DNA of 64,000 nucleotides from Glycera tridactyla (lineage: Eukaryota). The stretch is taken from positions 8,370,001 to 8,434,000 of the forward strand of contig OZ286476.1 in NCBI GenBank assembly GCA_965644265.1, written 5' to 3'. Below, piece by piece: positions 34,056 to 63,346 of this stretch. How positions within the stretch are numbered: position 1 is the stretch's first letter; every line of letters starts with the position of its first letter. A program made the translations under genes and the position numbers. The notes under the pieces are model-generated. The model searched no databases. It was not told the DNA's origin and worked only from the letters and a program-made list of their open reading frames with translations.

Positions 34056-34196
34056 AGTAGTACTATGTACAGATATAGCTTGATTTATGGCTTGACCGCT
34101 ATGATCGCTGCTGGATAGTTCGAGATTTGTCCACCAGGTGGCGGGATTTTATTTTTTTATTTGGTGTTGAATCAGTGGCGGATGGCGGAGGAAGTA
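34056..34196 (+). repeat. Left terminal inverted repeat (141 bp)
   Basis: AGTAGTACTATGTACAGATATAGC...GGCGGAGGAAGTA; exact reverse complement of 63206-63346 by base-by-base comparison. Confidence 0.97.
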
Positions 34197-34371
34197 CCGC
34201 CAGATTTAACTGCCGTTAGGTGGCAGGTGTTGGAATGAGATGGTGTGAGTCTTGATGGATGGGTGGTGGTGGGGTGGGGTGTGGGGAGGGGGAATTTTTT
34301 CTTGGGTTGGGAGGGTGTGAGACAGGTGATGGGGGGAAGGGAGGAAAGATGGGCTGGGTGGGGATGGGGCT

Positions 34372-34428
34372 GAGGCAGGTGGTCGGGAGGCAGGTGGTTA
34401 GGAGGCAGGTGGTTGGGAGGCAGGTGTT
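34372..34428 (+). repeat. Subterminal 15-bp tandem repeat x4 (GAGGCAGGTGGTYRG)
   Basis: Units start at 34372, 34387, 34402 and 34417 in a G-rich tract. Confidence 0.9.
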
Positions 34429-34739
34429 GTGATGAATGGGAGGGAGGGTGAAGAATATAGGAAGAGGATGGGTAAAAAATTGTATTGTTTGCATATTCCA
34501 TCCGCCAATCCATTGTCCTATGTTTTCGCGCCACGATGAATGACTGGTGAAGAGGTGATGTTGTTTCAATGACTGATGGGATTGAAATGAGATGATTAAT
34601 GAAAGAGAGAGCTCCTATCACGTGGTCAGTCAAGAGGGATTAATATCGTCATAATTCAAATGATGCACATGATGGTAGCCAATGAGATCCTTGTATATGA
34701 CTGAAATATAGAGATATCGCCCTGATGATTCCTCATTCA

Positions 34740-34747
34740 TATATAAG
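34740..34747 (+). promoter_or_regulatory. Putative TATA box of the left-end gene
   Basis: TATATAAG ~70 bp upstream of ATG 34812 (context GCCATGA); CACGTG E-box at 34619-34624. Confidence 0.5.
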
Positions 34748-34811
34748 GTGAAAACACATTATAACTGCACAGAATGATTAAGATCATTACTTCCTTTTTT
34801 ATCTTGTTGCC

Positions 34812-36448
34812 ATGACTGAAGATTTGGAGAAATATTGGGATTCTTTCTTTAGCGAGAAGTTTACACAAGAGGAAGCGGAGGAGTCCCAAAACCAACTCAA
34901 GGATAGCGAGGAAAGTGACGAACCCTTTCCCAAATTCACCTTATACACCCCATCTGACAATATAAATAATCGCCAAAAACGACGGATAAACAATCCTGGA
35001 GAAGAAACATTGAACATTCCGAAAAAGCGAGCTATACTTCACAGGGAAGGACTTAATAAGAAGATAGCTGAAACCAACTATTCACCTCAATTTTACGAAT
35101 ATACTGAATCCATAATTCCTCCTTCTCAGACTCCTGTGAGGAAAACTATTGGACATTCTGTTGATAATATTGATCAACCTCTCGATTTGAGTATGCGGAA
35201 ATCAAGGATGAGGATTGATTTGAATTCAGGTGATGAAAGTCATACAGTGTGGACCCGGGATTCTCCTCCCAAGACAGGTGAAGATTCTGATATGGAATCA
35301 GAAGATACAGACTATCTTTCATCACCCGTCATTGCTCCATCAACTCCAAATGGAAGAAAATATGTGTTCAAACCTTCATTTGCATTTGAAGGACACAATC
35401 CTGAAAATGATGGAATCGGGATTTATTATGGTAAGTTTTCCAATATTTGACTTTTCCCATGAAATCCACTTATTGATACTGATTCATGGATTAGGCTACT
35501 TGCCTTTGATTTCTAGACCTTGGTTGAGTCTGAGATAATAGATGAAGGGTGGATAGAAGAGTGAGAGTGAGTGTGAGTGTGAGAGAGTTAGAGTGAAGGA
35601 TTCGGGAGTGATGGGAAGTTCAATGGAAAGAGAGAGAGATGCACTCAGTCATTTCTCTGTAGATTGCCTTGGTGGAGTGAAATACTTGCTCCCTTTAATG
35701 TCAGCCTATATTTCAGGTATGTGATGTATAGAGGAGGTTCCTGTATGATTATGAGATTATTTCATGAATCAATTTTTTTATGCTTTCAGAAGAGGGAATC
35801 CTGTATATGGAAGTTGGCATAGATCGGATTGTACGTTTTACCTGTCGCAAACCAACGGAGATTGAATGCATGCGCCAAATACCATATGATGGGGCACCAG
35901 AGGATCATAAAATTGTTGTATCTCTGCAGCGGTGGTATAGAATGTCTAAGCTTCAGGATCATGTGAAAGAAGCTGTGGAGCAAATAATTGGAGATAATCC
36001 TGTGGAGACGAAATTACATCTTGGTGGTCTGCTATATTTGCAGGTCAGCTCAAAGTATCAGAATGTCCAAATAAGACAATATTCCATCCCAAACAACAAC
36101 AACAACAGAAAAATGTATGCTTCCAAGTTTGGTGTAGCTATGAGTATACCTGAGTATGCCTATTTTGCATCAATGTTACCAAAGTTCAATGAGAGAAATA
36201 TTGCATTCAATTGTTTCAAACCTTGTTATGAGGAGGATGCTCATGATGAAAATTGTTTGGAGTGTTATCCAAATAAAAAACCCAACCGGGTTATTGGGAA
36301 CAAGGAGCCTAATGGAGGTGGTCGGAGGTTTTTGAAAATTGGGGTTGGTGAAAAACTGTTTCCCAATCCTGCAGGGACACCATCATTGCTTCATTCTCGC
36401 CATATGTTCAAATTAGGCGAGGTTGATGGTGTCAATGTATATGACTGA
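34812..36448 (+). CDS. Two-exon protein (~425 aa): acidic disordered N-terminus with PLDLS motif plus PC4/Sub1-like domain; exons 34812-35430 and 35790-36448
   Basis: Donor G|GTAAGT at 35431 (phase 1) and acceptor TTTCAG at 35789 (phase 1) join the 212-aa and 222-aa ORFs in frame. KLHLGGLLYLQVSSKYQNVQIRQY...KFGVAMSIPEY resembles the PC4 pattern (YVSV...IDIREY...KGISL). Confidence 0.7.
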
Positions 36449-37483: not shown

Positions 37484-40400
37484 TTAATCAGGATCAGAGC
37501 GTAGCCTGACAGTTCTGGGAGTAATAATCTTCTTTGTGATTTTCTTCAAATGAGTTGAGGCACTGTCATTGACATTTCGCGGGTTCATTTGAGCAATTGC
37601 TAAATCTGTGACAGATTTTTGGTGATGTTCTCTATTTTCACTGTTTTCTGTCAGTGAGGGAATGGAACACTGTTCCTGTTTTGAGATCATCATGATAGCT
37701 TCACTGTCTTCAGTCAATGAGGGGCTTGGACATTGTTCCTCTTTTGAAATCATGAGAGGAGATTCATTCTCTTCACTGATTGAAGGCAAGGAGACCTGAA
37801 GTTGCTGTGAAGTCATCATGATGTCCCCCTGTGAGACTTTGTTTGAGTGATCAGGAACAGGAGAAGAAGAAGGTGAAATCATTGGGCAGTCAGCAAATCG
37901 ATTTGAGGATGACATCATCAGGCTCTCATCAGAGGTCTGCTCAGAGTGATGAGGAGGGGGGATGGAGATGGATATCATTGGGCAAACAGCAAATGGGTTA
38001 GTGGATGATATCATCATGCTCTCATGAGAGGTCTGACTTGAATGGTGATGAGGTGGTGGGGTGAGAGAAAACATTGGGTATTCAGCAAATGATCTTGAAC
38101 ATGAAATTTCATCAGGACAATTGGTTTGAGATGATGAAATCTCAGGTGAATATTCATTAATTTTCCCTGAATAATATTCATTCTTGAAAGTTGTTGATGA
38201 AGAGGATGAAATTGACTGTTTCAGTGATAAAGACTGATGAGATGAATCCATGTTTTTTGGATTGTTTGATGATTTATTTGGAATATCAGTACTTGTATGA
38301 TCATTCACTTCTGACCCATTCAGAGATGAAGGAGAAGACTTTGTCTTACTTTTACCATGGGTGGTATTTAGCCTATATCTGATCAACTCATCAATTTCAT
38401 CAAATTCCTGTTCACTTGTCTTGGTATGAATATCTGCCTTGACTGTAACTTGATTTCCAGCAAATGAGGACTGGGATAAAATTTCCTCAATGGAGGTAAT
38501 GAGTTCATCAGGATTCATATCTGATTTGTCTTCACAAGTAGCAACTGTTTTTTGAGCTGAGGGATGATTAGAAGGTGGACGGGGAGGGTGATGGGAAGGT
38601 GGAGGTGGAGTTGGAGAGGGAGAGTTTGTAGAAAGGGAAGAAGGAGATTTTCCACAGGTATTGTTCAAACTGAAAAATCTTGTGGACACTGATTTAGAAA
38701 CAGTGGCATTGTACGGAGTTGAGTGAATTGCTGGATTGAAACCTGACAGTTCCATTTCTTTTTTTTTCTGAGATTGATGAGCAGAATCTTTATGTGCAAT
38801 ACATGAGAGACTAGTATCAGGATGACTCATCATCATTTGATTGGAACAATTTTGAATAGACTTGGAAACATGAGGTTGCTGAGACATGAATTGAGAATCC
38901 CTCAATGAGGAAATGCATTCCTCTTTTGATGCTGTCAGATTTGCTGTTTGATATCCATCTTGATGTGAATCACCTGATGCTTGATCCAGCCCACCTGTTG
39001 CTTCATTATGATCACCTAATGCTTGTCCATCTGTTGCTTGTCTTAGAACAATGCCATGTTGATCACCATTTGACTGGAAGATAGACATAATAAAAGAAAT
39101 AATTTTCTATTGTTCAGTGTCATATTTTTACATGAAATATTCTGTATGTACTATGATTAGGTGGAATGATTGAATGATTTTCAGAGAATCTGAGAAAGAG
39201 AGGGATGATAAAATGATTTGGTTGAATGATTGAATGAATGATTGATTGAATGATTGAATGATTGATTGATTGAATGATTGATTGATTGATTGATTGATTG
39301 AATGAATGAGTGACATAATGAGAGAATGTGCAGGCAGAGCAAGTAACAGAAACAGAGATGACAATGAACAGGAAAAGACAGAAGTATATATAAAGGGNNN
39401 NNNNNNNNNNNNNNNNNNNNNNNNNNNNNNNNNNNNNNNNNNNNNNNNNNNNNNNNNNNNNNNNNNNNNNNNNNNNNNNNNNNNNNNNNNNNNNNNNNNN
39501 NNNNNNNNNNNNNNNNNNNNNNNNNNNNNNNNNNNNNNNNNNNNNNNNNNNNNNNNNNNNNNNNNNNNNNNACAGACAGTCTGAGAAACAGATGAGAAGT
39601 GGTAGACATGCAGACATTTTGATAACATCAGTCTCACCCTGTTTGAGGCTTGTGGATGAGGTTGAAGTCCATTTCCATCCAACACAGACCTCACTAAGGC
39701 ACAAGTGTTATTTATCTCACTGGATGATATGGCAAAGATTGGATTGGGATTCACCACAGTCCGGATAGATTCTCCATTAGATTCATGTTGAGCAGCAGAG
39801 GATTGGTCATGTTGAGGATTCCCTTGGGGATGTACATTTCCTAGCTCAATGTCAACAGGCATATGACCAAATCTTGTTCGGATTGCATTCAGAAATCTTG
39901 TCCCTGAAAATAAAAAACAAACAAATTCTCATACTTCATTTCAACAAATACTCAATATCTTGACTGATGATCACCATAAAGATCATACCAGAAATCAATC
40001 AGATATCATGGTATCAGAATTTTCAATTCAATAATTTTAATGCTCTTTCCAGGCTCTTTTCTAATGCTCATTCATGAGATGAGAAGAAAAAAAAGGATCA
40101 AAATTGATGAATTCTTAACAATAAGCCAATATGATTTGATATACCCAGTGTTTTCCATGGTCTATTCATTTTTGTTATTGAGACTGAGAGACAGTGTGAG
40201 TGAGTATGTGAGTGTCAGTGAGTGTGATTGATGGCAGTGAGAGAATGAATGAATGGATGAATGAATGAATGGATGGAAAATGAATTGATAAGTGATTTAT
40301 TAGATTGAATGATGAATGATTGATTGATTGATTGATTGATAGATTTGTATAGGTTAGACTATCTGAGGAAAATATGAGAAAAGACTTTTGGAATTCTTAC

Positions 40401-41340
40401 CAATCTTCATGAGGAGATACATCGTGAATGCAATAACAACAAAGGCAAGCATTCCAACAATGATTCCAATGATGTTAGTCATGGTTGTTCCCATCACTCC
40501 TGCTGAAGATGATGATATTCCAGGTAATTCAGGAAGTGTTGTAGGTACATTTGGCTCTTCAGGCGTAAATTGTCCAGTTGATGAGGTCGTTTGAGCTAGG
40601 TGAATGTCTTGTTCAGAGATGGTAGAAGTACCTTGGTCATCTGATACTGATTCAGGTGTCTCAATGAATGCTGATGATGACGGTGATTTGTCATTCGATA
40701 CTGCTGCTGATGGTGGAATAAGGGTTGAACCCGGCGAATGATGATCATTTGATGCAGGGTGAAGATTATCGAATGAGTGATAAGTGGGACTGGTATAAAC
40801 ATGATCTGTAGTCACCTCAATATCGGTGGTCACCTCATCACCGGTAGTCACGTCATCATCGGTAGTCAAATTATTATGGGTAGTTACCTGAATATCATCA
40901 GCTGATGTTGACATTCCAGGAGTGTGAGTGTATTCCTCGTAAATATAAGAGTAATCTGATGTGATGGAGCTAACCTGGTCATAGTTCAATGATGAAGCGA
41001 CAGATGGCGGTGATGAGGTTATTCCGTCTGCTGTCGACGATGACTTATTAGTCTGTCTATCGGCACCGATGTCCGAATATTTATCATCATCTTCTATCGG
41101 CGGAAGATCCTCACAGAACTTATAGTTCTTCCCCAGAACTGTCACGCACTCACACCACGGTTCATCCCAACATCGAGGCATTATTGATCCGGATTTCGCG
41201 TCTCCTGACAACATTCGATGTTTCACCGCGAGTGACCAATCTGGGCGTGATGCGTGAACCTGACGCGCATTGCTAAACAAATTCCCCTTTATTTCGATGT
41301 CAGAAAGTCGTAAATCGCATTGATAGGATTTCCAGATCAA
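37484..41340 (-). CDS. Multi-exon type I membrane glycoprotein (at least 931 aa); exons 41340-40401, 39903-39638, 39073-37484; first exon unresolved
   Basis: In-frame junctions G|GTAAGA (40400) to TTTTCAG (39904), phase 1, and AGG|GTGAGA (39637) to TTCCAG (39074), phase 0. Cys-containing N-domain, S/T mucin-like stalk, TM IIGIIVGMLAFVVIAFTMYLLM, long Ser/Pro-rich tail. Introns contain (TGAA/TGAT)n. Confidence 0.7.
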
Positions 41341-41540
41341 CTGAATGGTGTGGATCGCTTTACCTTATGTTAAACCACTTTGCTCACCCTTGGCACTCAG
41401 ATATGCACAAAATCCAAACTACTTCAGTGCATACCCTTCTGATAGCCAGTAGTATATAACATAACTATGGAGATCATGAATTTTTTTAAACATAAACAAA
41501 CAATTTTGTTCTGGTCAGTATACGTGACGTTTTATTTTTT

Positions 41541-41822
41541 TTCTAATAAATACATTCACAAGCATACAATTTTTTGCTAACTAAATTCATCTACGATATA
41601 TCTCTGCGAAGTCCATCTACAAGTAACACTTCATCAGAATACATTCACAAGATATACATACAGAAAAAATACAATATTTTTTTCTAATAAATACATTCAC
41701 AAGCATACAATTTTTTGCTAACTAAATTCATCTACAATATATCTCTGCTAAGTCCATTTACAAGTAATACTTCATCAGGATACATTCACAAGATATACAT
41801 ACAGAAAAAATACATTCACAAA
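41541..41822 (+). repeat. 141-bp direct tandem duplication (2 copies)
   Basis: TTCTAATAAATACATTCACAAGCATAC... starts at 41541 and 41682. Confidence 0.9.
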
Positions 41823-41893: not shown

Positions 41894-42424
41894 TCATAGC
41901 AGACTGAGCACATAATTACAAAGGTCATATTCAGGGAAAGTCAACATCTCTTCAATGATATCACTGTCTTTTTTCCCTTCCAATAATTTCAACCCGTAAT
42001 AACAACAAATGAATCCACAGGTAGATGAATTGAAATGTTGTAATTTCAAAATGTTGAATGAATATAGAGCATTAATTGCATTCTTCATAATGAAAGACAT
42101 GATATGAACCCCATAGTGAGAAGGGGGTTTTCCCATGGGATCAAAGAAATATACATTTATTGGTAAGTTATCAGTCTTTACTGGCTTAGGTAGATGAATT
42201 AATACCCAATGTCTACCTGTATTAAAGTTACGTTCAGTGTTGATAACATACAAACTAGGTCTTTTTTTTACATAGACATGTGGAAGTTCATTGCTAGCAC
42301 AAACCTCCACACATTTAAATTTTTTCATACCATCATAATCACAAAGTATCTGCATGATATCACCAGACAGCATAACGTAATTATTCATGTTAGAGTTTTT
42401 ATGAAAGATTCTTTTTCTATCCAT
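41894..42424 (-). CDS. PRO: Adenain-like cysteine protease (maturation protease)
   Basis: YVINT...GRHWVLI (His), YFFDPMG (Asp), LQHFNSSTCGFIC (Gln, Cys); directly downstream of MCP. Confidence 0.95.
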   Translation of the reverse strand: MDRKRIFHKNSNMNNYVMLSGDIMQILCDYDGMKKFKCVEVCASNELPHVYVKKRPSLYVINTERNFNTGRHWVLIHLPKPVKTDNLPINVYFFDPMGKPPSHYGVHIMSFIMKNAINALYSFNILKLQHFNSSTCGFICCYYGLKLLEGKKDSDIIEEMLTFPEYDLCNYVLSLL

Positions 42425-43877
42425 CAACCTTTATATTTCGTGCAGAATCTACTCTCAATAGTGAATTGTAAGTGGCATATAGTATTACAGTAACTGATTC
42501 TGTAAGTTGAGATGCAAATTTAATATCAAGTTTACTTAATCCTATTGATTGAGGATTAACAAATGGCTCCCCTTGGACACCACCATCGAGATTGAACAGG
42601 TACATGCAGTATCCATTTTTATATTCACCTCTCATTATAGTTGTTATTTTCCTTGGCTTCCCTGTGGATGGAGGAGAAGAGAATGAATATAATGAATCAA
42701 ATGCCTCTAGAAATAGGTCATTATTATAATCTGGTTGAAAAGCTTGTGATGGCACACATGACCCATCAACTGTGAGGCAAAGATAGTTAAGATTGAAATT
42801 CTCAAAATTAAATGGGTTCCTATGGTAGGCTCCATTGAATGCCTCTGATGAGACAAAGGCAACTACTAGTCGTTTTGGTTGAGCTGTGAGAAACAAATTA
42901 TCTAATGGCCATTGAGACATTCCTGAGGGTATAGCTGCTGTCTTTATTTCTGTTCTTTCGAAAGGGTATAGAGCAGGTCCAGCTGATAATCCTGTATTGT
43001 GTCCTAGAAGCATGGCAGGTGAAGGTTTGATCATTGGTACCTTCAATGTAGCCTGCAATATCTCTACTTTGTATTCTCTAGGAGAAGAAGAAGAAGAAGA
43101 AGAAGAAGAAGGTGATGATGATGTATCATCTGTTTCTGTATCTGTGGTTCCTGTTGTTGCTGAGGATGAAGTAGAGGTGGAAGCAGTAGGTTGTGGTCTA
43201 ATCAGTCTGAATTCTTCTGAGTTCTGTGTGAGTTTCAATGTTAGCTGGACAGCATTGAGTAGTAAGCGTTCTTGTTTTGTTAGATCTAAATGAAGTTTAC
43301 CCATCAATTCTACCACATTAGAATTAGATGTGTATGCTCGACGTTGGAAAAAACCTGGATTCATAGTTGCATTTACTGAGGTTGTACTATCCATTCGCCC
43401 ACTTTCATCTTTAAAAAATAACCCCTCCTTGAGTTGACCATCGATATCACTCCAGTCACTTTCTAATAAAGTGTCCATTATACTTCTATATGCATATGCA
43501 GACCCTGAACTGTTTACAAGTTGTTGTTGTAAAAATAGATCGACTTGTTTGAACATAGATGCAACGGGATAGTTAACAAATCCAACAACCTCTGAAGCTG
43601 GAACATCAGTACCGTCGGTAGATGATATCTTAACCTTTAAGTATAAATTGATATTTTTTAAGTCAATATACATCAATGAATTAGGCATTATATTGAATTC
43701 TATTGGAGCTCCTTGTCTGATTTGAGCAATAGGTGAAAAGTTCATGATAATAGTCTTTTCTCTCGAAATGTCCCGTGGTGGTAATGTAAATAGTTCCCAT
43801 TCTGTGGTATATCCATATCTTGTGTCGACACCTGGAGGTGTTTCATCACCGGCAGCACCCGTAGTTTCCATCTCCAT
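42417..43877 (-). CDS. MCP: Major capsid protein, double jelly-roll (Polinton PY), 486 aa
   Basis: LFTLPP, APIEFNI, YIDLKNINLYLKVKI, NYPVASMFKQVDL, YAYRSIMDTLL, PKRLVVAFV, AFNGAYHRNPFNF are Polinton PY-family patterns; size and position fit. Confidence 0.92.
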   Translation of the reverse strand: MEMETTGAAGDETPPGVDTRYGYTTEWELFTLPPRDISREKTIIMNFSPIAQIRQGAPIEFNIMPNSLMYIDLKNINLYLKVKISSTDGTDVPASEVVGFVNYPVASMFKQVDLFLQQQLVNSSGSAYAYRSIMDTLLESDWSDIDGQLKEGLFFKDESGRMDSTTSVNATMNPGFFQRRAYTSNSNVVELMGKLHLDLTKQERLLLNAVQLTLKLTQNSEEFRLIRPQPTASTSTSSSATTGTTDTETDDTSSSPSSSSSSSSSPREYKVEILQATLKVPMIKPSPAMLLGHNTGLSAGPALYPFERTEIKTAAIPSGMSQWPLDNLFLTAQPKRLVVAFVSSEAFNGAYHRNPFNFENFNLNYLCLTVDGSCVPSQAFQPDYNNDLFLEAFDSLYSFSSPPSTGKPRKITTIMRGEYKNGYCMYLFNLDGGVQGEPFVNPQSIGLSKLDIKFASQLTESVTVILYATYNSLLRVDSARNIKVDG

Positions 43878-44715: not shown

Positions 44716-44734
44716 TTTTTTTCTGTGCAGGTGG

Positions 44735-54717: not shown

Positions 54718-57700
54718 TTAATTATTTAAAATTGGTTCAAATACCTGATGTGAATGATTCGTCTCCTTATGCTGCAATAATTTCTCAATGGATGTGTAGC
54801 GAGCGGAATTTCTCTCTGTCTCGGTTTTTGCTTGCAAAAGGCAGGTATAACAACATACCATCATTACATTGGAATCAGTATCTGGCTCTTTGTGCTTAAC
54901 AATGTCCTTATTCAATAGGAACTTGGTCACTCTCTCATCAGTATGTTTCTCATCCTCGTCACTCACCTCATTGTCCTCAGCTTCATCGTCAGCATCATTA
55001 TCATAGTCAATGTCAGAATACCCCTTATTTTGTTCATTTATCTCATCATCATCATCATCACTACTTTCACCATTACCACATTCACCTCCCCCACTGCCAC
55101 CGCACCTGTCATCACCACCATCACTACCTTCACCTTGACTATCATTATCATTTNNNNNNNNNNNNNNNNNNNNNNNNNNNNNNNNNNNNNNNNNNNNNNN
55201 NNNNNNNNNNNNNNNNNNNNNNNNNNNNNNNNNNNNNNNNNNNNNNNNNNNNNNNNNNNNNNNNNNNNNNNNNNNNNNNNNNNNNNNNNNNNNNNNNNNN
55301 NNNNNNTCATTACCATAACATGAAACAGGGACATAATTTGACTGGAAAGAATTTACATCATTAATTTGATGAGCAGTACTATTGACATCATGGATATTTT
55401 CCTTTACACTAAGTACATTGTCATTTTTGAATGTGACTGATGATACACTAACTCTTCGATTAATATGAGGTGACAATACAGGAGATGAAGAAGGAGTGAC
55501 AAGAATTTCTGAAATTGAATGATTGATTTGTCTTGGAGAACAATCAAACACAGGAGAACAAAGATAATCCTGCATGGGGACTGAAACAACATCTTGACTA
55601 TTCAATTCAAACCCACTTTTAAACGGTGATATATCAACATTTGAAATATTCCTGTCAATTCTTTTATGCTCATTATCCATATTGTTATCATTACCTTGAC
55701 CATTGCTATCGTCATTGTCATCATTACCTTCACCATTGCTGTCGTCATTGTCATCATTACCTTGACCATTGCTGTCGTCATCGTCATCATTACCTTCACC
55801 ATTGCTGTCGTCATCGTCATCATTACCTTCACCATTGCTGTCGTCATCGTCATCATTACCTTCACCATTGCTGTCGTCGTCATCGTCATCACCACCACCA
55901 CCACCGCCACTGTCACCACCACCAGCGCCGCTGTNNNNNNNNNNNNNNNNNNNNNNNNNNNNNNNNNNNNNNNNNNNNNNNNNNNNNNNNNNNNNNNNNN
56001 NNNNNNNNNNNNNNNNNNNNNNNNNNNNNNNNNNNNNNNNNNNNNNNNNNNNNNNNNNNNNNNNNNNNCCATCACATTTGATATTTCTGACCATGGATCT
56101 GATATCAATCCTGCTACATATATTACGAAATTTCTTCTGTACAGATTTCAAGTCATAGATAGGAACAGATACAAGACTATTAGCAGATGATACCTTGGAA
56201 TCAACATTACCTTCATTTTCAGCACTGATACAAGAAATAACAGTATCATCATTAGTAAGATCTATAACATCATTATGTTCACCATTTATGATTACATTTG
56301 GATTTGACAGAGGTGAGAAGCAAGGAAAAGAAGATTCAGATGAGAGATTCCCATTTCCAGGACAATGACTAGGAAAAATAAAGGTAGAAGGATCTGAATT
56401 ATCCGTTCCGTAATGTGAAGCTTGGAGGAGAGCATGCTTTTCAACAGAAGGAGATACACACCTGATGTGACTTGACGATGTAGTGGGTTTATCAACCATT
56501 GTTCTCCTATCAGGTACGTCAGCTGCGGAAATAGAGACATCCTGTGGTCTTGTCTCCCCATAAACATCACTAGATGGTAGTTTTCTGGATGGTGTATTTC
56601 TGGACCGAGATAGCTTTGAACGTGAGTGATGTTTGCGTTCCTTCGACAGAGGTATTTCTGGTATCCCGGGTACAGTTTTTGTCTGAGACAAATGTCCATT
56701 CAATGAAGATCGAGAAGAAATATTTCCTCCCTTGTTATCGGCTGAAACATAACTTGACGACGAAGACATGGGAACATTACTCCCATGGATGACTGAAGAA
56801 CATATGGTAGCAGATACTGATTGTGGAACAATCTCAGCAGAAGAGTGATCGTTAGCAGAGGACAATACTGGTGAGACTCTCATGAGATGAAATCCAGGAT
56901 ATGGAGATATATGGGTATATTTTGAATCATATGATCCGGATATATGATGACCACTAGTTTTATCAGGACAATTCACATGAGAAGGTAGAAAAGTGGGAGT
57001 ATCATTCGCATAATTCGTTCCTGACTGAAAGTCCAAAGTCAAAGGATTATCAGATGCTGTCACTGGAGGAGTATCCAAGTGCATTGTGCGAGTCTGAGAG
57101 AGGTCCAGACCGACTGACAAACAAGAAGGAACAGATGCACTAGGTTGACTATCATATGTGGAACGTACATCCGCATCAGACATTATCGAGTGAGATACAT
57201 TCCGGAGTTGATCAAAAACACCTGATCTAACACTGGTGGAGCAAGGTGAGTGATCTCTCAAATTGTCCCTAATATATTCACCAACATCAGCTGATGTCTT
57301 CTGAAATGTCTCTAGTGAATCATTGGTCGATTGTCTATGTCTATATCCATGGATTTGATCAGAAGTATCATAATCAGACTTTATGATATTCTGATCAATG
57401 AGTAAATTTCCCGAAGACAATTGATCACCTTGGCTTTTTGGTATAGGCACACTTGATGATGGGGTGATAGACACAGTAGAATGATAAGATTCATTCTTCT
57501 GTTCTGAAGGTAATATACTTCTATTGTCCAAAAATGACACTCTCCGTTTCTTTGAACGATGCAAAGCTTCATGATTGTGTGAAATTACAGAGTCTTTCCC
57601 ACATGGAGGGATGGAAGGTGCATTGCTACAAGTGCTTGTTTTTGCTGATTTACCAGCAGAGCGAATACATACAGTTTGAGTGTGATGATCATGATGACGG

Positions 57701-57826
57701 ACTGATGGACATGAATGCATATTGTGAGCATCTGCTGATGAGGAGCGCTTACGTTTCTCTCGAAGTACAGATTTCATAACATGACCAACAGTGTTAAGTG
57801 CTTTTACTAGTCTACGACACACACGC
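54718..57826 (-). CDS. Ser-rich/acidic low-complexity ORF (~1030 aa across two N-gaps); probable upstream exon of POLB
   Basis: Acceptor TTTCATTTCAG at 57827; donor CAG|GTATTT at 54744 in phase 0, matching the POLB acceptor; VIDLT motif; atypical C-x2-C-x23-H-x4-H; frame continuity across the gaps is unverified. Confidence 0.6.
55689..55890 (-). repeat. 33-bp coding tandem repeat x6 (NGEGNDDDDDS)
   Basis: Units start at 55689, 55722, 55755, 55788, 55821 and 55854. Confidence 0.92.
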
Positions 57827-57922: not shown

Positions 57923-58040
57923 TCATTGTCTGAATTATCGTCTCAGTCAACGTCAAAGTCATTATCTGAATCATCGTCTCAGTCAACGTCAAAGTCATTA
58001 TCTGAATCATCGTCTCAGTCAACGTCACAGTCATTATCTA
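57923..58040. repeat. 36-bp tandem repeat x3 plus partial copy
   Basis: TCATTATCTGAATCATCGTCTCAGTCAACGTCAAAG starts at 57923, 57959, 57995 and 58031. Confidence 0.9.
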
Positions 58041-58335
58041 ATTTGACGTCAGATTAATTGCCAGAGTCTTCGTCGATACCATTCATGTTCACAGTCATCG
58101 TCACATTCATCACCTCTCAGCAGTAGGGTCATCATCATCATCATCATCTTCTCAGCAGCAGGGTCATCATCACCTCCACCTTCACCTTTACTACCGACTG
58201 CTCACTATCATTTCCATCACTTACATCATCAAACATCACCACCGTCATCATCACCATGACTACACTCAACAGGGTGGACCTCGAACATGAACAGAAAATG
58301 AGGGAGATACAAATAATATTGTCATGTCCACTTAC

Positions 58336-58591
58336 ATTCCGTAACGAATAGTTGAGTCCGAATTATCCTTCTCCTTGTGGTTACAAGATAAACAACGCTG
58401 CCTTGAACTGGTTACATTATGATCCATCATATGTTTTCTAGATGTACTATCCACTGCAGCTGTATCCCCTATGATGTTAGGTAGAGACAAATTTGGTACA
58501 TTCCGTCTGGTGATGGAGTCAGGTTTTGAAGTGTCATCTACAGTTTCATCATGATCATCATTCTCCCATGATGATATATCACTCACTCCAT
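58336..58591 (-). CDS. Internal exon upstream of the 1030-aa ORF
   Basis: Donor AT|GTAAGT at 58335 (phase 2) matches acceptor 57827 (phase 2); acceptor TATATTCAG at 58592. Confidence 0.5.
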
Positions 58592-58840
58592 CTGAATATA
58601 CAGTCAGCTCTTAGTTCATATGTTGTGTTGATGATATATGTATATCGATATATTCCTACTTTTAAACCCCTTCTAATCTAAGCTCGTATACTATCCTTAG
58701 CATGAAATTATTCTTGAAAGTGACCTCATTCCTAAATCTAGACCCTATATGAGAGGTTATATGAGTCATATGTTATCTATCGATTATATATTTCTTCTAA
58801 GAAGCTACCCTATCATATAAGTAAACATGATTTTGCCAAT

Positions 58841-59416
58841 TTAGGAAACACACCTAATGCAGGCCTCAGCGGATTTTACTAACCACTGCCTGATATCTCG
58901 ATACTGACCATCAAAAAGGTCACAAGGATCACACAATAGTCGCCAAAATAACTTCTCCCAATAACGAGAAGGAACAGGGGAAAAATAAGCATCCTTATCT
59001 ACTTCTTCAAGTTGCTTCTGAAGCATTGCTTGAGCTTCCAGGACCACAAACTTCGAAAAGGTCATATGATATCTGCAAGTATATTCTGTATCCACACATT
59101 CGCAATCAAACAATTTTATCGGATCCATAAGCCAAAAGTCTTCAATCGCCATTCTAACATACTGAGGGGCTTGAAGTACTATTCCCTTCTGTTCAGATAA
59201 TGATATGATTCGCCCTAGTATAGAACACAGTTCAGTTGTAACACAGTCCTCAGCAATGGAGATTAGAACCAAATGAGGAGGATGGGGGCCAGCGTTGCCT
59301 GAATCGGTATCTGGCTTAAACCAGTCTACAATAAGGAAAATAATAACACAGGCTTTAATGAGATAAGTAACCATGAGGTCATATCTCAATATCATGATCA
59401 ACAAAATCATATGCAT
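58841..59416 (-). CDS. Hypothetical protein/exon (191-aa ORF; likely starts at acceptor TTATTGTAG)
   Basis: Protein-like helical composition; no recognisable family. Confidence 0.45.
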   Translation of the reverse strand: MHMILLIMILRYDLMVTYLIKACVIIFLIVDWFKPDTDSGNAGPHPPHLVLISIAEDCVTTELCSILGRIISLSEQKGIVLQAPQYVRMAIEDFWLMDPIKLFDCECVDTEYTCRYHMTFSKFVVLEAQAMLQKQLEEVDKDAYFSPVPSRYWEKLFWRLLCDPCDLFDGQYRDIRQWLVKSAEACIRCVS

Positions 59417-60125
59417 GATTGCTATGGTCAGGATCCTCAGTCAGTAAATCATCAGGTTCAAATTCTTCTTCGAGGAATGAAATTTCTGGACTGTCATGAA
59501 CTTCAGGACAATAATCAGTGACATAAAGGTAATCAAGGTCACTGATATAACCATCATCTAATCGACCGTCATGAACGTTTTCAAGACCATCGTCTTCAGC
59601 ATCATCCAGAGAAATATCATGAATGTAACGATCATCAATTTCATTTGTACTGACTGTGTCATTATCATTGACATTCGTTGCATGATCACTTATACCCATA
59701 TTCTGACATTCAGGTCGAAAGCAATCATGACATATGTTCATTGAACATGAAGCATTGTCAAAAAAATGACGATGACGATGACGATGATGATTCATACTAC
59801 TTTCTGGATGTACAAGACATCTATCTCTCATTACATCAACAGTATATTCAAAAGTATTACCATGACGTGAGGATATCTCATTAAATGATACTCTAGAATT
59901 GATATCTTGTGAACTATCTATCAAATTATATCTGACATTACATGATAGAGATATTATCAATTCTGACTCAGATGGAGATGTCACTGAACCAGAGGTCTCT
60001 GTAAGTTTCGTCTGCGTTTTCGTAATCATCCTCCTCCTCATCGTCGCTAGAAACATGAAGAAAAAGGAATGCCCTAACATAGTCCTCATTCTCGAAACCA
60101 GAGGTTGCAAACTGGTAGAAATCAT
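59379..60125 (-). CDS. Hypothetical acidic protein/exon with His/Cys cluster (248-aa ORF)
   Basis: HHRHRHRH..CSMNICHDCFRPEC then an Asp/Glu-rich tail; overlaps neighbouring ORFs in other frames, so the structure is unresolved. Confidence 0.4.
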   Translation of the reverse strand: MISTSLQPLVSRMRTMLGHSFFFMFLATMRRRMITKTQTKLTETSGSVTSPSESELIISLSCNVRYNLIDSSQDINSRVSFNEISSRHGNTFEYTVDVMRDRCLVHPESSMNHHRHRHRHFFDNASCSMNICHDCFRPECQNMGISDHATNVNDNDTVSTNEIDDRYIHDISLDDAEDDGLENVHDGRLDDGYISDLDYLYVTDYCPEVHDSPEISFLEEEFEPDDLLTEDPDHSNHAYDFVDHDIEI

Positions 60126-61768
60126 CCTTATTGAATCGTATCAAAGACCTGACTGTTTTTCTCAGTCGAGAATATGGTATATAGCTTTTTTGAAATACAA
60201 TCTTATGAAGTGTGATGTACACCATCTGATAATGATCACATGTCCTAGCAAGATGTTTGAAAGGACGTGATAAATATCTGGGAAGTTTAGATCTAACATC
60301 TTTCATCAGATCTACCAACAGGTCATTTCCTTCAGAGGGGCTCAAATATCTATCATTCATTACTGAATTGACTACACAATTTTCTCGATGAAGACCAAGA
60401 TGATCAATAAGCATTTGCATTGCTTTAGTGAAATAGTACTCTTCATTTCCCTCAGTTATATCCCAATCAGCAAGATCTAGTACTACTTCCATAAATGTCA
60501 TATACTGTGAAGTTAGAGCATCCAAACAAATTTGCTCTATGGCTGTGTACAGATGGTCAACTCCGGCATTTACTGCAACAACACAATCAGCAAAGAATTA
60601 CTCTATGACTTTCCGATCAAATGTGTGGGTACAGATATATTCTTTCAGTCTGATAAAAGTATATTGATCAAGCTACTCATCAAACAAGCTGGCCAAATTA
60701 TCATCTGCATATATATCATCATCATCAAAAAACTCAAACCCCTTTGTCACCAAAGATTTTTCCTGACATTTCAGTCTCCCCATCTGCTGAAATACGATTT
60801 GGACATTTGATCTTGCCAAGCTGAGCAAATTTTGATGCTCAATTCGGTCAGTCATGACCAATACCCAAACAACATGGCCATGGATAAGGAGAGCTGGATT
60901 GAAGCTCAAACGGACAGGCGGGTCCTCAAGCTGAAGTCTAGCCAACAGTAAACCTTGCACTCGACTACAAATTGTGTCTACATAATCTATACCATCTCTC
61001 ATTATAGGCATCACAGAAGCATCTTTCTGTAACATACGCTCAACTGGGTGTGAATTGATCACAGCCAAAGCACTTTGAACAAAACCCAGAGGGGAGCGAT
61101 CAAATTTTCCGAGACCCTGAGCAGTACACAACATCGAGTTGACAAGATTAAGTATGACGCCGTTGATCTCTCTTAAAGTGACAGAAGATACCAATTGACG
61201 TAATCTAGATGGTGTAATGTGAGGAAGATCGCTGTCGTCACTTGAAGATATATCTTCAAAACTAGGGATATTTCGCAGAAAGTCTCGTGTGGTCGCCGCT
61301 TCGTCTAGGGAAACCAGTCCAAAGCACTCTAGATTGCACAAGATGCAAATTTTATGAAACAGAAGAAAAGGAAATAATCCCTTTTAAATAATACTGATAT
61401 AAGCTCATATAGATAAAAAATCAAATATTTCAGATTATGTGTATTGCCTTCTCAATTCCTAAATGACAAGTAATATTTTCCATCATCATCTTTGAAGTGA
61501 AGATATTTCTTGAGCCTCATATCAATAGAGCACCTTTTCATATATTTCACTCACCAGAGAATTCGTCATTTGCACATGCTGATGCATTTCCATTCTCCTT
61601 TGATGCATCAGATGATGATCCACCCGAGGAAGGAGGATCAGAAGCGGTGGAAGCTCCTTCAGCAGAGGGGGGATCTGCTTCAGAAGAGGTAGCTCCTTCT
61701 GCATTCGAAATTTCATCTCCCAAGCCATTATCAGGAGGGACAGGCACTGCTCCATTGGTAGCATCCAT
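59968..61768 (-). CDS. Right-end spliced accessory gene: exon 61768-61555, exon from 61328; short form stops at 60673 (289 aa); frame continues to 59968
   Basis: Donor CTG|GTGAGT (61554, phase 1) joins acceptor AATCTAG (61329, phase 1) in frame; the 222-aa and 185-aa ORFs share one frame separated by TAG 60675-60673 and TAA 60600-60598. Confidence 0.55.
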
Positions 61769-62317
61769 AGTTAGTGCTGAAATAATATGAGTCCGGGATG
61801 TGTATCTCACAAAGATGTTCGCCAAAACTTGAAGACAGCAGATGATATACTCCCTCTCTGATATTACAGCGATGAAAATAAACATTCAGCAACCAAGACC
61901 AATGTCATGCACTGATAAAGAATGTCAAGAATTACATTCATATAACGGCTTCTCTGATTGGTCAAGAGAATAAACATTTTTTTATCATCATTTGCTATAT
62001 GTGGTACATTTCTTGTGAAAAGTCTCCCCAAGCTGACAAACATGGAGGAGGAAAGACAACATTGAAATACAATGAATGGAGGCAACTACGGCGAAGATAG
62101 TTTTAGCAGATAAAAATTTACAAAAGATTTCAGGCTAAAGCTCTTCCGTTTACATAACCCAGTGAACAAACATACGGACACCTGCCATCTTTCCGACAAA
62201 CAGCATACTCATCATAACAACTCCACACTATTCACCAATCAAAATATGTTGCATCATTCAAAATTTTGAGATCAGGCTATTTTCAATACAATCATAAACT
62301 TAATTTATGGCGATGAT

Positions 62318-62329
62318 AGTCACGTGACT
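62318..62329. promoter_or_regulatory. 12-bp palindromic E-box AGTCACGTGACT upstream of the right-end gene
   Basis: Perfect palindrome containing the USF/TFE-type GTCACGTGAC motif; function not shown. Confidence 0.35.
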
Positions 62330-63205
62330 TATTTCCACCTAAGGACAAGGTGAATGATGAACTTTCATTCAGTCAACCTCAGACATTGGAACAGTTTAGA
62401 TCACATCANNNNNNNNNNNNNNNNNNNNNNNNNNNNNNNNNNNNNNNNNNNNNNNNNNNNNNNNNNNNNNNNNNNNNNNNNNNNNNNNNNNNNNNNNNNN
62501 NNNNNNNNNNNNNNNNNNNNNNNNNNNNNNNNNNNNNNNNNNNNNNNNNNNNNNNNNNNNNNNNNNNNNNNNNNNNNNNNNNNNNNNNNNNNNNNNNNNN
62601 NNNNNNNNNNNNNNNNNNNNNNNNNNNNNNNNNNNNNNNNNNNNNNNNNNNNNNNNNNNNNNNNNNNNNNNNNNNNNNNNNNNNNNNNNNNNNNNNNNNN
62701 NNNNNNNNNNNNNNNNNNNNNNNNNNNNNNNNNNNNNNNNNNNNNNNNNNNNNNNNNNNNNNNNNNNNNNNNNNNNNNNNNNNNNNNNNNNNNNNNNNNN
62801 NNNNNNNNNNNNNNNNNNNNNNNNNNNNNNNNNNNNNNNNNNNNNNNNNNNNNNNNNNNNNNNNNNNNNNNNNNNNNNNNNNNNNNNNNNNNNNNNNNNN
62901 NNNNNNNNNNNNNNNNNNNNNNNNNNNNNNNNNNNNNNNNNNNNNNNNNNNNNNNNNNNNNNNNNNCCTCTTCACCTACATTCGGTATTTTTTTCAAGCT
63001 TGAAGGAAGGACAGAAAGGTGGTGATTACTCATACATGAATACATGCATTCACATCACCAACACCCAGTCAAACATCAACTTCCCTCCGCACATCTGCCG
63101 TCATGCACCATCCGACAGTAAATCAAACATCAGCTTCCCTCAGCAAACACAGGCCATTATTCTCCATCACCTGCCTACCATCTCACCCTCCCCTGAATCC
63201 AGGCC

Positions 63206-63346
63206 TACTTCCTCCGCCATCCGCCACTGATTCAACACCAAATAAAAAAATAAAATCCCGCCACCTGGTGGACAAATCTCGAACTATCCAGCAGCGATCA
63301 TAGCGGTCAAGCCATAAATCAAGCTATATCTGTACATAGTACTACT
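63206..63346 (-). repeat. Right terminal inverted repeat (141 bp)
   Basis: Exact reverse complement of 34056-34196. Confidence 0.97.

What the first reader, a model, noticed from the sequence alone, without database searches (positions are those of the whole stretch)
34056..63346. System view: an endogenous virus with its own transcription-control kit and an adenovirus-like genome plan
Seen in one element: an inward-facing spliced left-end gene (PLDLS + PC4-like), a spliced membrane glycoprotein, a compact intronless virion cluster containing TBP, a polymerase apparently needing an upstream exon, and an inward-facing spliced right-end gene with an acidic-aromatic tail. Known: adenoviruses have spliced E1A (PLDLS) at the left, E3 membrane proteins, E2B Pol/pTP completed by splicing and leftward E4 at the right; PC4 and TBP are general Pol II cofactors. 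Inference: a staged early/late programme in which TBP, PC4, a CtBP antagonist and an activator act together. This is the best candidate for an undescribed system in the window.
Basis: partly seen in the sequence, partly recalled or inferred. Interest (0 to 1): 0.85.

Follow-up and report, generated by a model that had tools for sequence, protein, structure and literature searches.

The report
Maverick endogenous virus with own TBP
This is a 29-kb Polinton/Maverick-type (adintovirus-like) virus-like element, recently integrated and with no visible breaks; the element type is already known, and its noteworthy feature is a divergent TATA-binding protein shared with its relatives, alongside a few apparently spliced regulatory-looking genes at the two ends.

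Summary
The coordinates are exact. The element spans 34056-63346, with perfect 141-nt inverted terminal repeats flanked by a 6-bp target duplication (CATGCG). It is a Polinton/Maverick.

- **Core genes:** protein-primed PolB (PF03175), rve integrase with a chromo-like tail, a double-jelly-roll capsid protein (AlphaFold model, Foldseek E 1e-14), an adenain-like protease and an A32-like ATPase. All are uninterrupted ORFs.
- **TBP:** real (Pfam 3e-21, both repeats). It belongs to a separate clade (88% bootstrap). DNA-contact columns are changed across the clade, while the TFIIB- and TFIIA-contact columns are kept.
- **TBP co-occurrence:** TBP relatives and capsid relatives appear to share four contigs.
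- **PLDLS:** present once.
- **"PC4-like" ORF:** only a low-confidence tandem PC4/PUR/Whirly-type fold, with no sequence match.
- **End genes:** both have canonical, phase-compatible GT-AG introns, but these are predictions without RNA evidence.
- **Mucin-like membrane protein:** no leader exon was found.
- **Polymerase:** it has an in-frame ATG, so it need not be spliced.

No homology to adenovirus E1A, E3, E4 or pTP was found, and the strand plan differs from adenovirus. A coordinated "transcription kit" remains an inference. I rate this a new variant of a known kind, of moderate interest.

The parts
34050..34055 (.). Left copy of the 6-bp target-site duplication (CATGCG)
   Evidence: the same hexamer directly flanks both ends.
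34056..34196 (+). Left terminal inverted repeat, 141 nt; begins AGTAGTA
   Evidence: 100% complementary to 63206-63346. The tool's 142nd position is the adjoining TSD base.
34222..34426 (+). Subterminal GGCAGGTG motifs (5 copies, 4 of them in a 15-nt tandem array at 34372-34426)
   Evidence: 9 copies in the window against 0.67 expected; the tandem array.
34740..34747 (+). The only canonical TATA box at a sensible promoter position, 72 nt before the left gene's ATG
34812..35430 (+). Left-end gene, predicted exon 1: acidic, disordered-looking, contains PLDLS (nt 35178)
   Evidence: Donor G|GTAAGT verified.
35431..35789 (+). Predicted GT-AG intron of the left-end gene (359 nt), phase-compatible with both ORFs
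   Evidence: phase 1 plus 2. The N-terminus of homolog P0001 reads like a translated acceptor tract at the same place. No RNA evidence.
35790..36448 (+). Left-end gene, predicted exon 2: tandem four-strand-plus-helix (PC4/PUR/Whirly-type) nucleic-acid-binding domain
   Evidence: No sequence-level match.
37484..39088 (-). 534-aa Ser/Thr/Pro-rich repetitive ORF, no membrane helix, function unknown
39572..39862 (-). 97-aa ORF piece ending at gap 39398-39571; preceded by an acceptor-like site; unverified
40354..41340 (-). Mucin-like protein with one C-terminal membrane helix. The ORF opens right after an acceptor-like CAG. No start codon or signal peptide was identified.
41536..41814 (.). 141-nt tandem repeat (2 copies, 96% alike) between the protease gene and the membrane-protein gene
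41894..42427 (-). Adenain/Ulp1-type cysteine protease (sub-threshold matches)
   Evidence: Peptidase_C5 at 0.0035 and C48 at 0.0048. ASFV S273R protease, with His and Cys motifs aligned.
42417..43877 (-). Major capsid protein, double jelly roll
   Evidence: 42 relatives, best 59% identity; model pLDDT 81. Sputnik, PBCV-1, SGIV and mavirus capsid proteins at E 1e-14. BFVD.
43889..44272 (-). 127-aa protein with a highly basic C-terminal half (core, pX-like candidate)
   Evidence: Assigned by composition and position only.
44245..44805 (-). Candidate minor capsid (penton) protein
   Evidence: Position next to the capsid gene. No Pfam or PDB match. Unverified.
44735..46003 (-). rve integrase with a C-terminal chromo-like domain
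   Evidence: rve 1.8e-13. Chromo 0.0012 and MSL3 chromo-like 2.4e-4, both below the curated cut-offs..
46000..46452 (-). 150-aa ORF with one hydrophobic helix, function unknown
46553..47317 (-). TATA-binding-protein homolog (core is residues ~76-250; true start codon uncertain)
47097..47887 (-). Two small ORFs (152 aa acidic with a basic tail, and 122 aa), function unknown
48022..48732 (-). Packaging ATPase candidate (A32/FtsK-HerA type), P-loop present
   Evidence: Pox_A32 at 5.9e-4, below cut-off..
49003..49135 (.). 41-nt tandem repeat (3.2 copies) between the PolB and ATPase genes
49356..54392 (-). Protein-primed family B DNA polymerase: a 1678-codon open frame with a ~740-residue N-terminal extension that includes a Cys-rich region
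   Evidence: PF03175 at 4.7e-35; acceptor-like site at the ORF's start, basic stretch before the first in-frame ATG (codon 79).
54718..57822 (-). Large Ser-rich and acidic-repeat ORF upstream of PolB, interrupted by two assembly gaps; preceded by an acceptor-like site at 57826
   Evidence: No family match.
58332..60525 (-). Four overlapping ORFs (84, 191, 248 and 185 aa) with further donor- and acceptor-like sites; two end in acidic tails; gene models unresolved
60673..61328 (-). Right-end gene, predicted exon 2, ending in the acidic-aromatic tail
   Evidence: No family or PDB match.
61329..61554 (-). Predicted GT-AG intron of the right-end gene (226 nt), phase-compatible
61555..61768 (-). Right-end gene, predicted exon 1 (71 codons, Ser/Ala/acidic-rich); CCAAT-like box upstream
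63206..63346 (-). Right terminal inverted repeat
63347..63352 (.). Right copy of the target-site duplication (CATGCG)

Best explanation
SHOWN
- The region is one integrated Polinton/Maverick-type virus-like element of the adintovirus kind, nominally 29,291 nt including 1,185 N.
- It entered this site recently: the terminal repeats are identical, the 6-bp duplication is intact, and every recognisable core gene is a single open frame.
- It carries a morphogenesis block on the minus strand: packaging ATPase, capsid protein, probable penton and core protein, and protease.
- The integrase and a TBP gene sit inside that block, and a protein-primed polymerase lies upstream of it.

INFERRED
- The outer genes are built differently from the virion block: they have predicted introns and disordered acidic regions, and the left gene has the element's only well-placed TATA box. 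This suggests host-Pol-II-driven regulatory ('early-type') genes, while the intron-free block has no TATA boxes.
- The TBP belongs to a clade of its own that travels with the capsid gene in relatives.
- Across the clade the DNA-contact columns are altered, while the TFIIB- and TFIIA-contact columns are kept.
- Most likely, therefore, it assembles host initiation factors on promoter sequences that ordinary TBP does not prefer, that is, on the element's own TATA-less promoters.
- The left-end protein joins a PLDLS-bearing tail to a tandem PC4/PUR/Whirly-type fold. Its most likely job is binding single-stranded nucleic acid, either in replication or in transcription.
- CtBP binding is possible, but it rests on one short motif.
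For: - **Element identity:** (TIR, TSD, AG...CT ends; PolB PF03175 at 4.7e-35, rve at 1.8e-13, chromo-like tail, protease and ATPase sub-threshold; capsid model pLDDT 81; double-jelly-roll capsids at E 1e-14; best BFVD match a bracovirus-borne protein at 26% identity, E 1.9e-27).
- **Intactness:**. No copy or fragment in the flanks.
- **TBP is real:**
- **TBP clade:**: 7 hits at E 1e-30 or lower and 40-44% identity, against about 1e-12 to 1e-16 for ordinary long TBPs; 88% of 300 NJ bootstraps.
- **TBP column shares:** the window and all 8 clade members have Met at the yeast-F99 column, Asn at T124, Ser at V161 and non-Asn at N159. E186 and E188 are kept 8 of 8. Residue roles come from my own knowledge of yeast TBP; the numbering was read from the alignment.
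- **Co-occurrence:** the longest-contig lengths and sources of capsid relatives equal those of TBP relatives four times: 10668, 24122, 19741 and 7528.
- **Two gene styles:** splice sites and phases; TATA scan.
- **Left-end protein:**
Against: - No RNA evidence exists for any intron, promoter or timing.
- The host is unknown.
- TBP co-occurrence is inferred from equal contig lengths, not read from DNA.
- No shared promoter motif was found in the intergenic stretches of the virion block, so there is no visible target for a variant TBP.
- The model of the PC4/PUR-like domain is poor (pLDDT 49) and no Foldseek match reaches E 0.001.
- The protease, ATPase and chromodomain matches are below the curated cut-offs. 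The penton is unverified.
- An OTU domain in the PolB N-terminus, a hallmark of adintoviruses, was not detected.
- Five assembly gaps hide part of the element.
Confidence: 0.75

Rival explanations
1. One reading: TBP, a PC4 cofactor, a CtBP antagonist (PLDLS) and an acidic activator form one coordinated kit that runs a staged adenovirus-like early/late programme.
For: All four features are present in one apparently intact element. The end genes face inward and have predicted introns. A canonical TATA box precedes only the left gene. GGCAGGTG (E-box-type) arrays sit next to both terminal repeats; from my own knowledge, such boxes are bound by repressors that use CtBP.
Against: There is no homology to E1A, E3, E4 or pTP. 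PC4 is supported only as a fold class, from a weak model. PLDLS is one 5-residue motif whose conservation is untested. The acidic tail is a matter of composition only. Co-occurrence in relatives is indicated for TBP alone. The strand layout differs from adenovirus.
Confidence: 0.2
2. The left-end protein is the element's replication single-strand-DNA-binding protein, the functional counterpart of the DNA-binding proteins of other protein-primed replicons, and not a transcription cofactor.
For: The fold class of PC4, PUR-alpha, Whirly and MRP binds single-stranded nucleic acid, and two units in one chain give a complete binding module. The element replicates by a protein-primed PolB yet has no other recognisable single-strand-binding protein. 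From my own knowledge, a phage PC4-like protein serves in replication and recombination.
Against: The fold assignment is of low confidence. The disordered acidic N-terminal half with PLDLS looks more like a regulator. There are no data on expression or binding.
Confidence: 0.35
3. The TBP gene is a recent passenger copied from the host, or a decoy that blocks host transcription, rather than a factor for the element's own promoters.
For: Virus-like elements do pick up host genes. The adintovirus preprint lists TBP among 'homologs of host proteins'. No target motif was found.
Against: A recent capture is contradicted by 30-38% identity to ordinary TBPs, by a distinct clade with shared substitutions, and by apparent linkage to capsid relatives that are themselves only 53-59% identical. 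A decoy role is not excluded: the kept TFIIB and TFIIA columns fit either reading.
Confidence: 0.15
4. The long accessory ORFs and splice sites are chance features of a dead repeat or an assembly artefact.
For: There are five gaps in 29 kb. Several accessory ORFs are low-complexity and match no family.
Against: The 141-nt terminal repeats are perfect and the target duplication is exact. Open frames of 422 to 1678 codons occur in DNA of about 37% G+C. The capsid, TBP and PC4/PUR-like ORFs have conserved relatives.
Confidence: 0.05

Closest known systems
Polinton/Maverick elements (self-synthesizing transposons / polintoviruses)
   Same: Terminal inverted repeats beginning AG and ending CT, a 6-bp target duplication, protein-primed PolB, rve integrase, double-jelly-roll capsid protein, adenain-like protease, A32-type ATPase, and a size in the 15-40 kb range.
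   Different: It carries a TBP gene inside the virion block, a PC4/PUR/Whirly-type gene and several large low-complexity ORFs. The papers I could search do not describe these for Polintons.
Adintoviruses (Starrett et al. 2021, PMC8502044; Buck et al. 2024 preprint)
   Same: A PF03175-type ('Alpha') PolB with a long N-terminal extension, an integrase with a chromo-like C-terminus, adenovirus-type virion genes, and motif-bearing regulatory-looking ORFs upstream of PolB.
   Different: The hallmark OTU-like domain was not detected. No PLA2X, gasdermin-like or cupiennin-like gene was seen. Reciprocal hexon BLAST against the reference viruses was not done. The host is unknown. TBP is drawn in that paper only for related MELD viruses in the section on non-animal datasets.
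Adenoviruses
   Same: Inverted terminal repeats, protein-primed PolB, hexon-type capsid protein, adenain-type protease, packaging ATPase, inward-facing (predicted) spliced genes at the two ends, and a PLDLS motif in the left-end gene, as in E1A (the E1A point is from my own knowledge).
   Different: No detectable homolog of E1A, E3, E4, pTP or DBP. The virion genes and PolB are on the same strand. An integrase and a target duplication are present. The element is a chromosomal insertion.
Cellular TBP and TBP-related factors; TBP-like genes of other DNA viruses
   Same: A two-repeat TBP saddle. The TFIIB-contact Glu pair and the basic/aromatic TFIIA patch are conserved.
   Different: Only two of the four DNA-kinking Phe positions are kept in the window's protein, and three of four in most of its clade. 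The central Asn of repeat 2 and neighbouring DNA-contact positions are replaced clade-wide. There is no long N-terminal domain. Unlike giant viruses, this element has no RNA polymerase of its own, so the protein would have to work with host polymerases.
PC4/Sub1, PUR-alpha, Whirly, MRP1/2 (four-strand-plus-helix single-strand-binding fold)
   Same: The predicted secondary structure is two units of four strands plus a helix. Single units superpose on the PC4 C-terminal domain (TM 0.72-0.76 over 64-65 residues), and the pair superposes on PUR-alpha repeats I-II and on MRP1/2.
   Different: No sequence-level match to the PC4 family. There are two units in one chain rather than a homodimer. It is followed by a Cys/His-rich and Gly-rich tail, and in the splice model it is preceded by a disordered PLDLS-bearing half.

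Membership tests
Polinton/Maverick | Long terminal inverted repeats with 5'-AG...CT-3' ends | tested here: met
   141 nt, 100% identical, starts AG and ends CT.
Polinton/Maverick | 6-bp target-site duplication | tested here: met
   CATGCG on both sides.
Polinton/Maverick | Protein-primed family B DNA polymerase | tested here: met
   PF03175 at E 4.7e-35.
Polinton/Maverick | Retrovirus-like rve integrase | tested here: met
   PF00665 at E 1.8e-13..
Polinton/Maverick | Double-jelly-roll major capsid protein | tested here: met
   model pLDDT 81; virophage, PBCV-1 and iridovirus capsid proteins at E 1e-14, probability 1.0.
Polinton/Maverick | Minor capsid (penton) protein | tested here: inconclusive
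   The candidate ORF 44245-44805 is assigned by position only. No match.
Polinton/Maverick | Adenain/Ulp1-like cysteine protease | tested here: inconclusive
   E 0.0035-0.0048, below the cut-offs; weak match to a viral clan-CE protease, with His and Cys aligned.
Polinton/Maverick | A32/FtsK-HerA packaging ATPase | tested here: inconclusive
   Pox_A32 at E 5.9e-4, below cut-off. P-loop and Walker B seen..
Adintoviridae (as defined in PMC8502044 and the 2024 preprint) | [quoted passage not shown] | tested here: inconclusive
   A ~740-residue N-terminal extension exists, but there is no OTU match in Pfam or PDB.
Adintoviridae | Integrase with a C-terminal chromodomain | tested here: inconclusive
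   Chromo at E 0.0012 and MSL3 chromo-like at 2.4e-4 on the last 83 residues, both below the curated cut-offs.
Adintoviridae | Hexon recognisable by reciprocal BLASTP with reference adintovirus hexons | not tested
   In BFVD an 'Adintovirus sp.' protein matched at fold level only (rank 18).
Adintoviridae | Animal host | not testable with these tools
   The host of the window is not given. The flanks hold only a reverse-transcriptase fragment.
Adenovirus-type genome plan | Homologs of E1A, pTP, DBP, E3 or E4 proteins | tested here: not met
   no such Pfam family, even at relaxed E-values. Only the PLDLS motif is present.
Adenovirus-type genome plan | Late virion genes on the strand opposite to the polymerase unit (from my own knowledge of adenovirus maps) | tested here: not met
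   PolB and all virion genes are on the minus strand.
TBP family (PF00352) | Two tandem TBP repeats forming the saddle | tested here: met
   E 3.3e-21, two stretches; aligned over both repeats.
TBP family (canonical TATA-binding type) | Four DNA-kinking Phe residues and the paired central Asn residues | tested here: not met
   the window has Met and Leu at two of the four Phe columns and Ala at the repeat-2 Asn column. The Met and the non-Asn are clade-wide.
PC4/Sub1 family (PF02229) | Sequence match to the family model | tested here: not met
   no hit at E up to 10; no PC4 chain among the PDB hits.
PC4/PUR/Whirly fold class | Four antiparallel strands followed by a helix, paired into a two-unit module | tested here: inconclusive
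   the pattern is predicted twice, but pLDDT is 49; the best E is 1.7e-3, with matches almost all from this fold class.
CtBP-binding proteins | PxDLS motif in an accessible region, conserved among relatives | tested here: inconclusive
   The motif is present once in a disordered-looking region. Conservation was not tested because no search was left and relatives' DNA was not fetched.

The most novel reading that the evidence does not exclude
A small nuclear DNA virus-like element without its own RNA polymerase carries a promoter-specificity switch. Its TBP variant keeps the surfaces for host TFIIB and TFIIA but has a remodelled DNA face. It would redirect host polymerase to the element's TATA-less virion genes, much as an alternative sigma factor does in bacteria. 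The TATA-bearing left-end gene would start the cycle and, through its PLDLS motif, relieve CtBP-dependent repression at the E-box-type arrays next to the terminal repeats.
Probability: 0.15. Interest if true: 0.8.

Novelty: new variant of a known kind. Interest (0 to 1): 0.5.

Why it matters
Polintons/Mavericks are among the most widespread virus-like elements of eukaryotes, and almost nothing is known about how their genes are switched on. If a lineage of these elements stably carries its own TBP, with a changed DNA-binding face but preserved contacts to host initiation factors, that gives a concrete and testable handle on the question. It would also be a rare case of a small, polymerase-less DNA virus bringing a general transcription factor. 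The element is also a clean reference example: exact ends, no visible breaks, and two contrasting styles of gene architecture. That makes it well suited to annotating this class in genome assemblies.

Tried and rejected
1. **Exact-product look-up** of the window's TBP and integrase to find the host: nothing on record.
2. **Word-based homolog search with TBP:** no hit. The full HMMER scan was needed.
3. **Names for relatives:** three cluster look-ups gave almost none. The nearest non-clade TBPs (about 170 aa, metagenome contigs) could therefore not be identified. My passing idea that the gene derives from an animal TBP-like factor is untested and dropped.
4. **Sequence tests for PC4, OTU, E1A, pTP, E3 and E4:** all negative.
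5. **Paralogy among the right-end ORFs:** none. **Internal repeat of the PC4/PUR-like ORF by BLASTP:** not significant.
6. **Upstream signal-peptide exon for the membrane protein:** none convincing.
7. **Shared promoter motif in the virion block:** k-mer sharing is within the null, and the candidate TCATAGGAA is not enriched. CATATATAR is at chance level.
8. **LxCxE:** one copy in the right-end gene, at chance level.
9. **Other searches:** no Rfam family, tRNA or PHROG hits of note. No PDB hits for the right-end proteins or the penton candidate.
10. **A first tree script timed out**. A second had invalid distances because fragments were included.

Full report
**Scope and rules followed**

I read and compared the sequences as they stand.
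- Predicted exons were searched one by one, by reference. Splice models were checked by arithmetic on coordinates only.

One slip has to be declared. None of these letters was sent to a tool. None is written in the notes or in this report, and none is used as evidence. The PC4 and OTU statements below rest on the cited calls alone. The yeast TBP letters used for numbering came from the alignment printed.

**Gaps first**

The element holds five runs of N, 1,185 of its 29,291 nominal positions.
- Two lie between genes: 36597-36762 and 62409-62966.
- One (39398-39571) truncates a 97-codon ORF piece and abuts a (TTGA)n microsatellite.
- Two (55154-55306 and 55935-56068) lie inside the large minus-strand ORF 54718-57822, next to 33-nt tandem repeats that code for acidic residues.

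Each sequenced piece of that ORF has exactly one open frame, and with the nominal gap lengths these frames coincide. Because the gap lengths are estimates, continuity is plausible but not shown. ORFs that the ORF listing draws only through the Ns (for example around 62350-63045 and 36536-36881) are artefacts.

**The observation**

The finding's bounds are exact.
- A 141-nt inverted repeat with 100% complementarity occupies 34056-34196 and 63206-63346.
- The hexamer CATGCG directly flanks both ends.
- The ends read AG...CT and begin with a trinucleotide said twice (AGTAGTA).

These are the signatures of a Polinton/Maverick insertion. The identity of the repeats points to a recent one. No other piece of the element lies in the 34 kb of flank, which holds a reverse-transcriptase fragment.

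**Core genes**

All core genes are on the minus strand and each is a single open frame. I saw no stops, frameshifts or insertions in any recognisable core gene; what the gaps hide is unknown.

| Gene | Coordinates | Evidence |
|---|---|---|
| Protein-primed PolB | 49356-54392 | PF03175 at E 4.7e-35 |
| Packaging-ATPase candidate | 48022-48732 | Pox_A32 at 5.9e-4, P-loop present |
| rve integrase | 44735-46003 | E 1.8e-13, with a chromo-like C-terminus at E 2.4e-4 to 1.2e-3 |
| Capsid protein | 42417-43877 | see below |
| Adenain/Ulp1-type protease | 41894-42427 | sub-threshold |

The capsid protein had no family match, but it has 42 relatives, the best at 59% identity.
- An AlphaFold model from their alignment reached pLDDT 81.
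- The model matched the double-jelly-roll capsid proteins of Sputnik, PBCV-1, a grouper iridovirus and mavirus at E about 1e-14.
- In the viral structure library the best match was an uncharacterised protein of a Cotesia bracovirus (26% identity, E 1.9e-27). From my own knowledge, that bracovirus lineage is known to have taken up a Maverick.

A basic 127-residue protein (43889-44272) and a 186-codon ORF (44245-44805) sit where core and penton proteins are expected. These two are unverified.

**TBP**

ORF 46553-47317 is a true TBP homolog with both repeats (Pfam 3.3e-21; PDB TBPs at 1.8e-18).

A full HMMER scan of 1.84 billion representatives found 1,278 relatives.
- Seven short proteins (198-247 aa) stand far above the rest, at E 1e-35 to 1e-44 and 40-44% identity.
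- Ordinary long TBPs score about 1e-12 to 1e-16.
- In a neighbour-joining tree of 60 near-complete cores, the window's protein groups with these (P0052-P0058, P0060 and P0074) in 88% of 300 bootstraps.

The column shares are the most informative result. Residue roles are from my own knowledge of yeast TBP.
- **Changed in the clade.** At DNA-contact columns the clade differs from the 109 ordinary TBPs as a block: Met for Phe at the first kinking position (8 of 8, against Phe in 103 of 109), Leu for Val-71, Asn for Thr-124, Ser for Val-161, and Ala, Ser or Cys for the central Asn-159.
- **Kept in the clade.** The TFIIB-contact Glu-186 and Glu-188 are kept 8 of 8. The TFIIA patch is changed only conservatively.
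- **Window only.** The window's protein additionally has Leu at the third kinking position.

So the faces that dock host initiation factors are preserved, while the DNA face is remodelled.

**Does TBP travel with the virus genes?**

I could not read the relatives' DNA. However, the tables list the longest contig and the sources for each protein.

| Contig length | Capsid relative | TBP relative |
|---|---|---|
| 10668 | P0010 | P0202 |
| 24122 | P0012 | P0055 |
| 19741 | P0016 | P0060 |
| 7528 | P0049, P0050 | P0058 |

 Four such coincidences cannot reasonably be chance. The TBP gene is therefore very probably a stable component of this lineage and not a recent capture. This fits its 35-41% identity among clade members, against 53-59% for the capsid.

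**Left-end gene**

- A canonical TATA box (34740) lies 72 nt before ATG 34812.
- The 34812 ORF is acidic and disordered-looking. It holds the single PLDLS of the element (nt 35178); shuffles give 0.05 exact matches.
- It runs into a consensus donor (G|GTAAGT, last exon base 35430). A pyrimidine tract plus CAG ends at 35789. The phases (1 and 2) join it in frame to ORF 35780-36448.
- The only homolog found for the second ORF (P0001, 47% identity) has an N-terminus that reads like a translated acceptor tract at the same spot.
- The second ORF has no Pfam or PDB sequence match.
- A two-sequence AlphaFold model is poor (pLDDT 49), but it predicts four strands plus a helix twice over.
- Foldseek returns almost only members of one fold class: MRP1/2 (E 1.7e-3), PUR-alpha repeats I-II, Whirly, and the PC4 and MoSub1 domains (TM 0.72-0.76 over single units).

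'PC4-like' is thus acceptable as a fold class and not as family membership. The two-units-in-one-chain layout is closer to PUR-alpha. That fold binds single strands, so a role as the replicon's DNA-binding protein is a serious rival to a transcription role.

**Right-end gene**

- On the minus strand a CCAAT-like box precedes ATG 61768.
- A 71-codon Ser/Ala/acidic exon ends at a consensus donor (last base 61555).
- An acceptor ends at 61329, and the phases join it in frame to ORF 60673-61341.
- That ORF's last 21 residues hold 9 acidic and 5 aromatic residues.
- It has no relatives in Pfam or PDB.
- Four further overlapping ORFs (58332-60525) have additional donor- and acceptor-like sites, and two have acidic ends. 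They are not detectable paralogs, and I could not resolve their gene models.

**Other claims**

- **'Membrane glycoprotein' (40354-41340).** It has a Ser/Thr-rich domain and one C-terminal membrane helix, and it opens right after an acceptor-like CAG. I found no phase-compatible upstream exon with a signal peptide.
- **Polymerase.** The open frame begins directly after an acceptor-like site, and a basic, nuclear-localisation-like stretch precedes the first in-frame ATG at codon 79. The large upstream ORF is likewise preceded by an acceptor-like site at 57826. A shared leader is conceivable but not required.
- **Adenovirus families.** No E1A, pTP, DBP, E3 or E4 family matched any ORF.
- **Layout.** The virion genes share a strand with PolB, and there is an integrase. 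The 'adenovirus-like plan' is therefore the general kinship already described for adintoviruses and not a specific match.

**Promoters**

Only the left gene has a well-placed canonical TATA box; none precedes the minus-strand genes. I looked for a shared motif in the intergenic stretches of the virion block and found nothing above the null. The proposed target of the variant TBP is therefore unidentified.

**What is known**

- The adintovirus papers define the class and note 'Oncoid' ORFs upstream of PolB.
- Searches pairing Polinton or Maverick with TBP or PC4 found no analysis of such genes.

**Verdict**

- The element is a new, clean member of a known class.
- Its TBP lineage, with a remodelled DNA face, is a variant feature worth following up.
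- The coordinated 'kit' is unproven.

Confidence is 0.75 for the best explanation as a whole. The element's identity as a Polinton/Maverick is the most secure part, and the proposed TBP mechanism the least. Interest is 0.5.

Noticed in passing
34222-34426 (+), 63168-63175 (-), 62179-62186 (-): GGCAGGTG, which has an E-box-type core, occurs 9 times in the window against 0.67 expected. Seven copies sit just inside the two terminal repeats and point inward, four of them in a 15-nt tandem array. The 558-N gap on the right may hide more. They could be binding sites for a host factor or for an element protein.
   Followed up: partly
34056-34062 and 63340-63346: The element's ends begin with a trinucleotide said twice (AGTAGTA). 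From my own knowledge, short terminal reiterations of this sort are what protein-primed replicons use for slide-back initiation.
   Followed up: no
41536-41814, 47954-48009, 49003-49135, 57922-58039: Four intergenic tandem repeats (141 nt x2, 24 nt x2.3, 41 nt x3.2 and 36 nt x3.3) lie upstream of minus-strand genes. They may be promoter or enhancer elements. They share no motif.
   Followed up: partly
60774 (-), in ORF 60673-61341: An LxCxE motif lies about 20 residues before the acidic tail of the right-end protein, the arrangement the adintovirus paper calls 'Oncoid'-like. By count it is at chance level.
   Followed up: partly
47097-47317: The TBP open frame overlaps the preceding 152-codon ORF by about 220 nt. 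The TBP core starts just after that ORF's stop. One relative (P0202) has a similar N-terminal extension. The true start of the TBP gene is uncertain.
   Followed up: partly
52200-52830 (PolB residues ~520-740): A Cys-rich stretch with many CxxC pairs lies between the N-terminal extension and the polymerase domain. It has no family match.
   Followed up: no
54721-55152 (-): The C-terminal piece of the large acidic ORF ends in a short Cys/His-containing segment, with sub-threshold matches to two domains of unknown function.
   Followed up: no
2883-3290 (-): A reverse-transcriptase fragment (RVT_1, E 1.2e-15) in the left flank, i.e. an unrelated retroelement remnant.
   Followed up: no
32928-32987; 39218-39313: A (TA)n microsatellite in the flank, and a (TTGA)24 microsatellite inside the element next to gap 39398-39571.
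   Followed up: no
P0062-P0084 (protein hits): Core-only TBP-like proteins of about 170 aa, mostly from short metagenome contigs, score between the element's clade and ordinary TBPs and share some of the same DNA-face substitutions. Their origin is unknown.
   Followed up: partly
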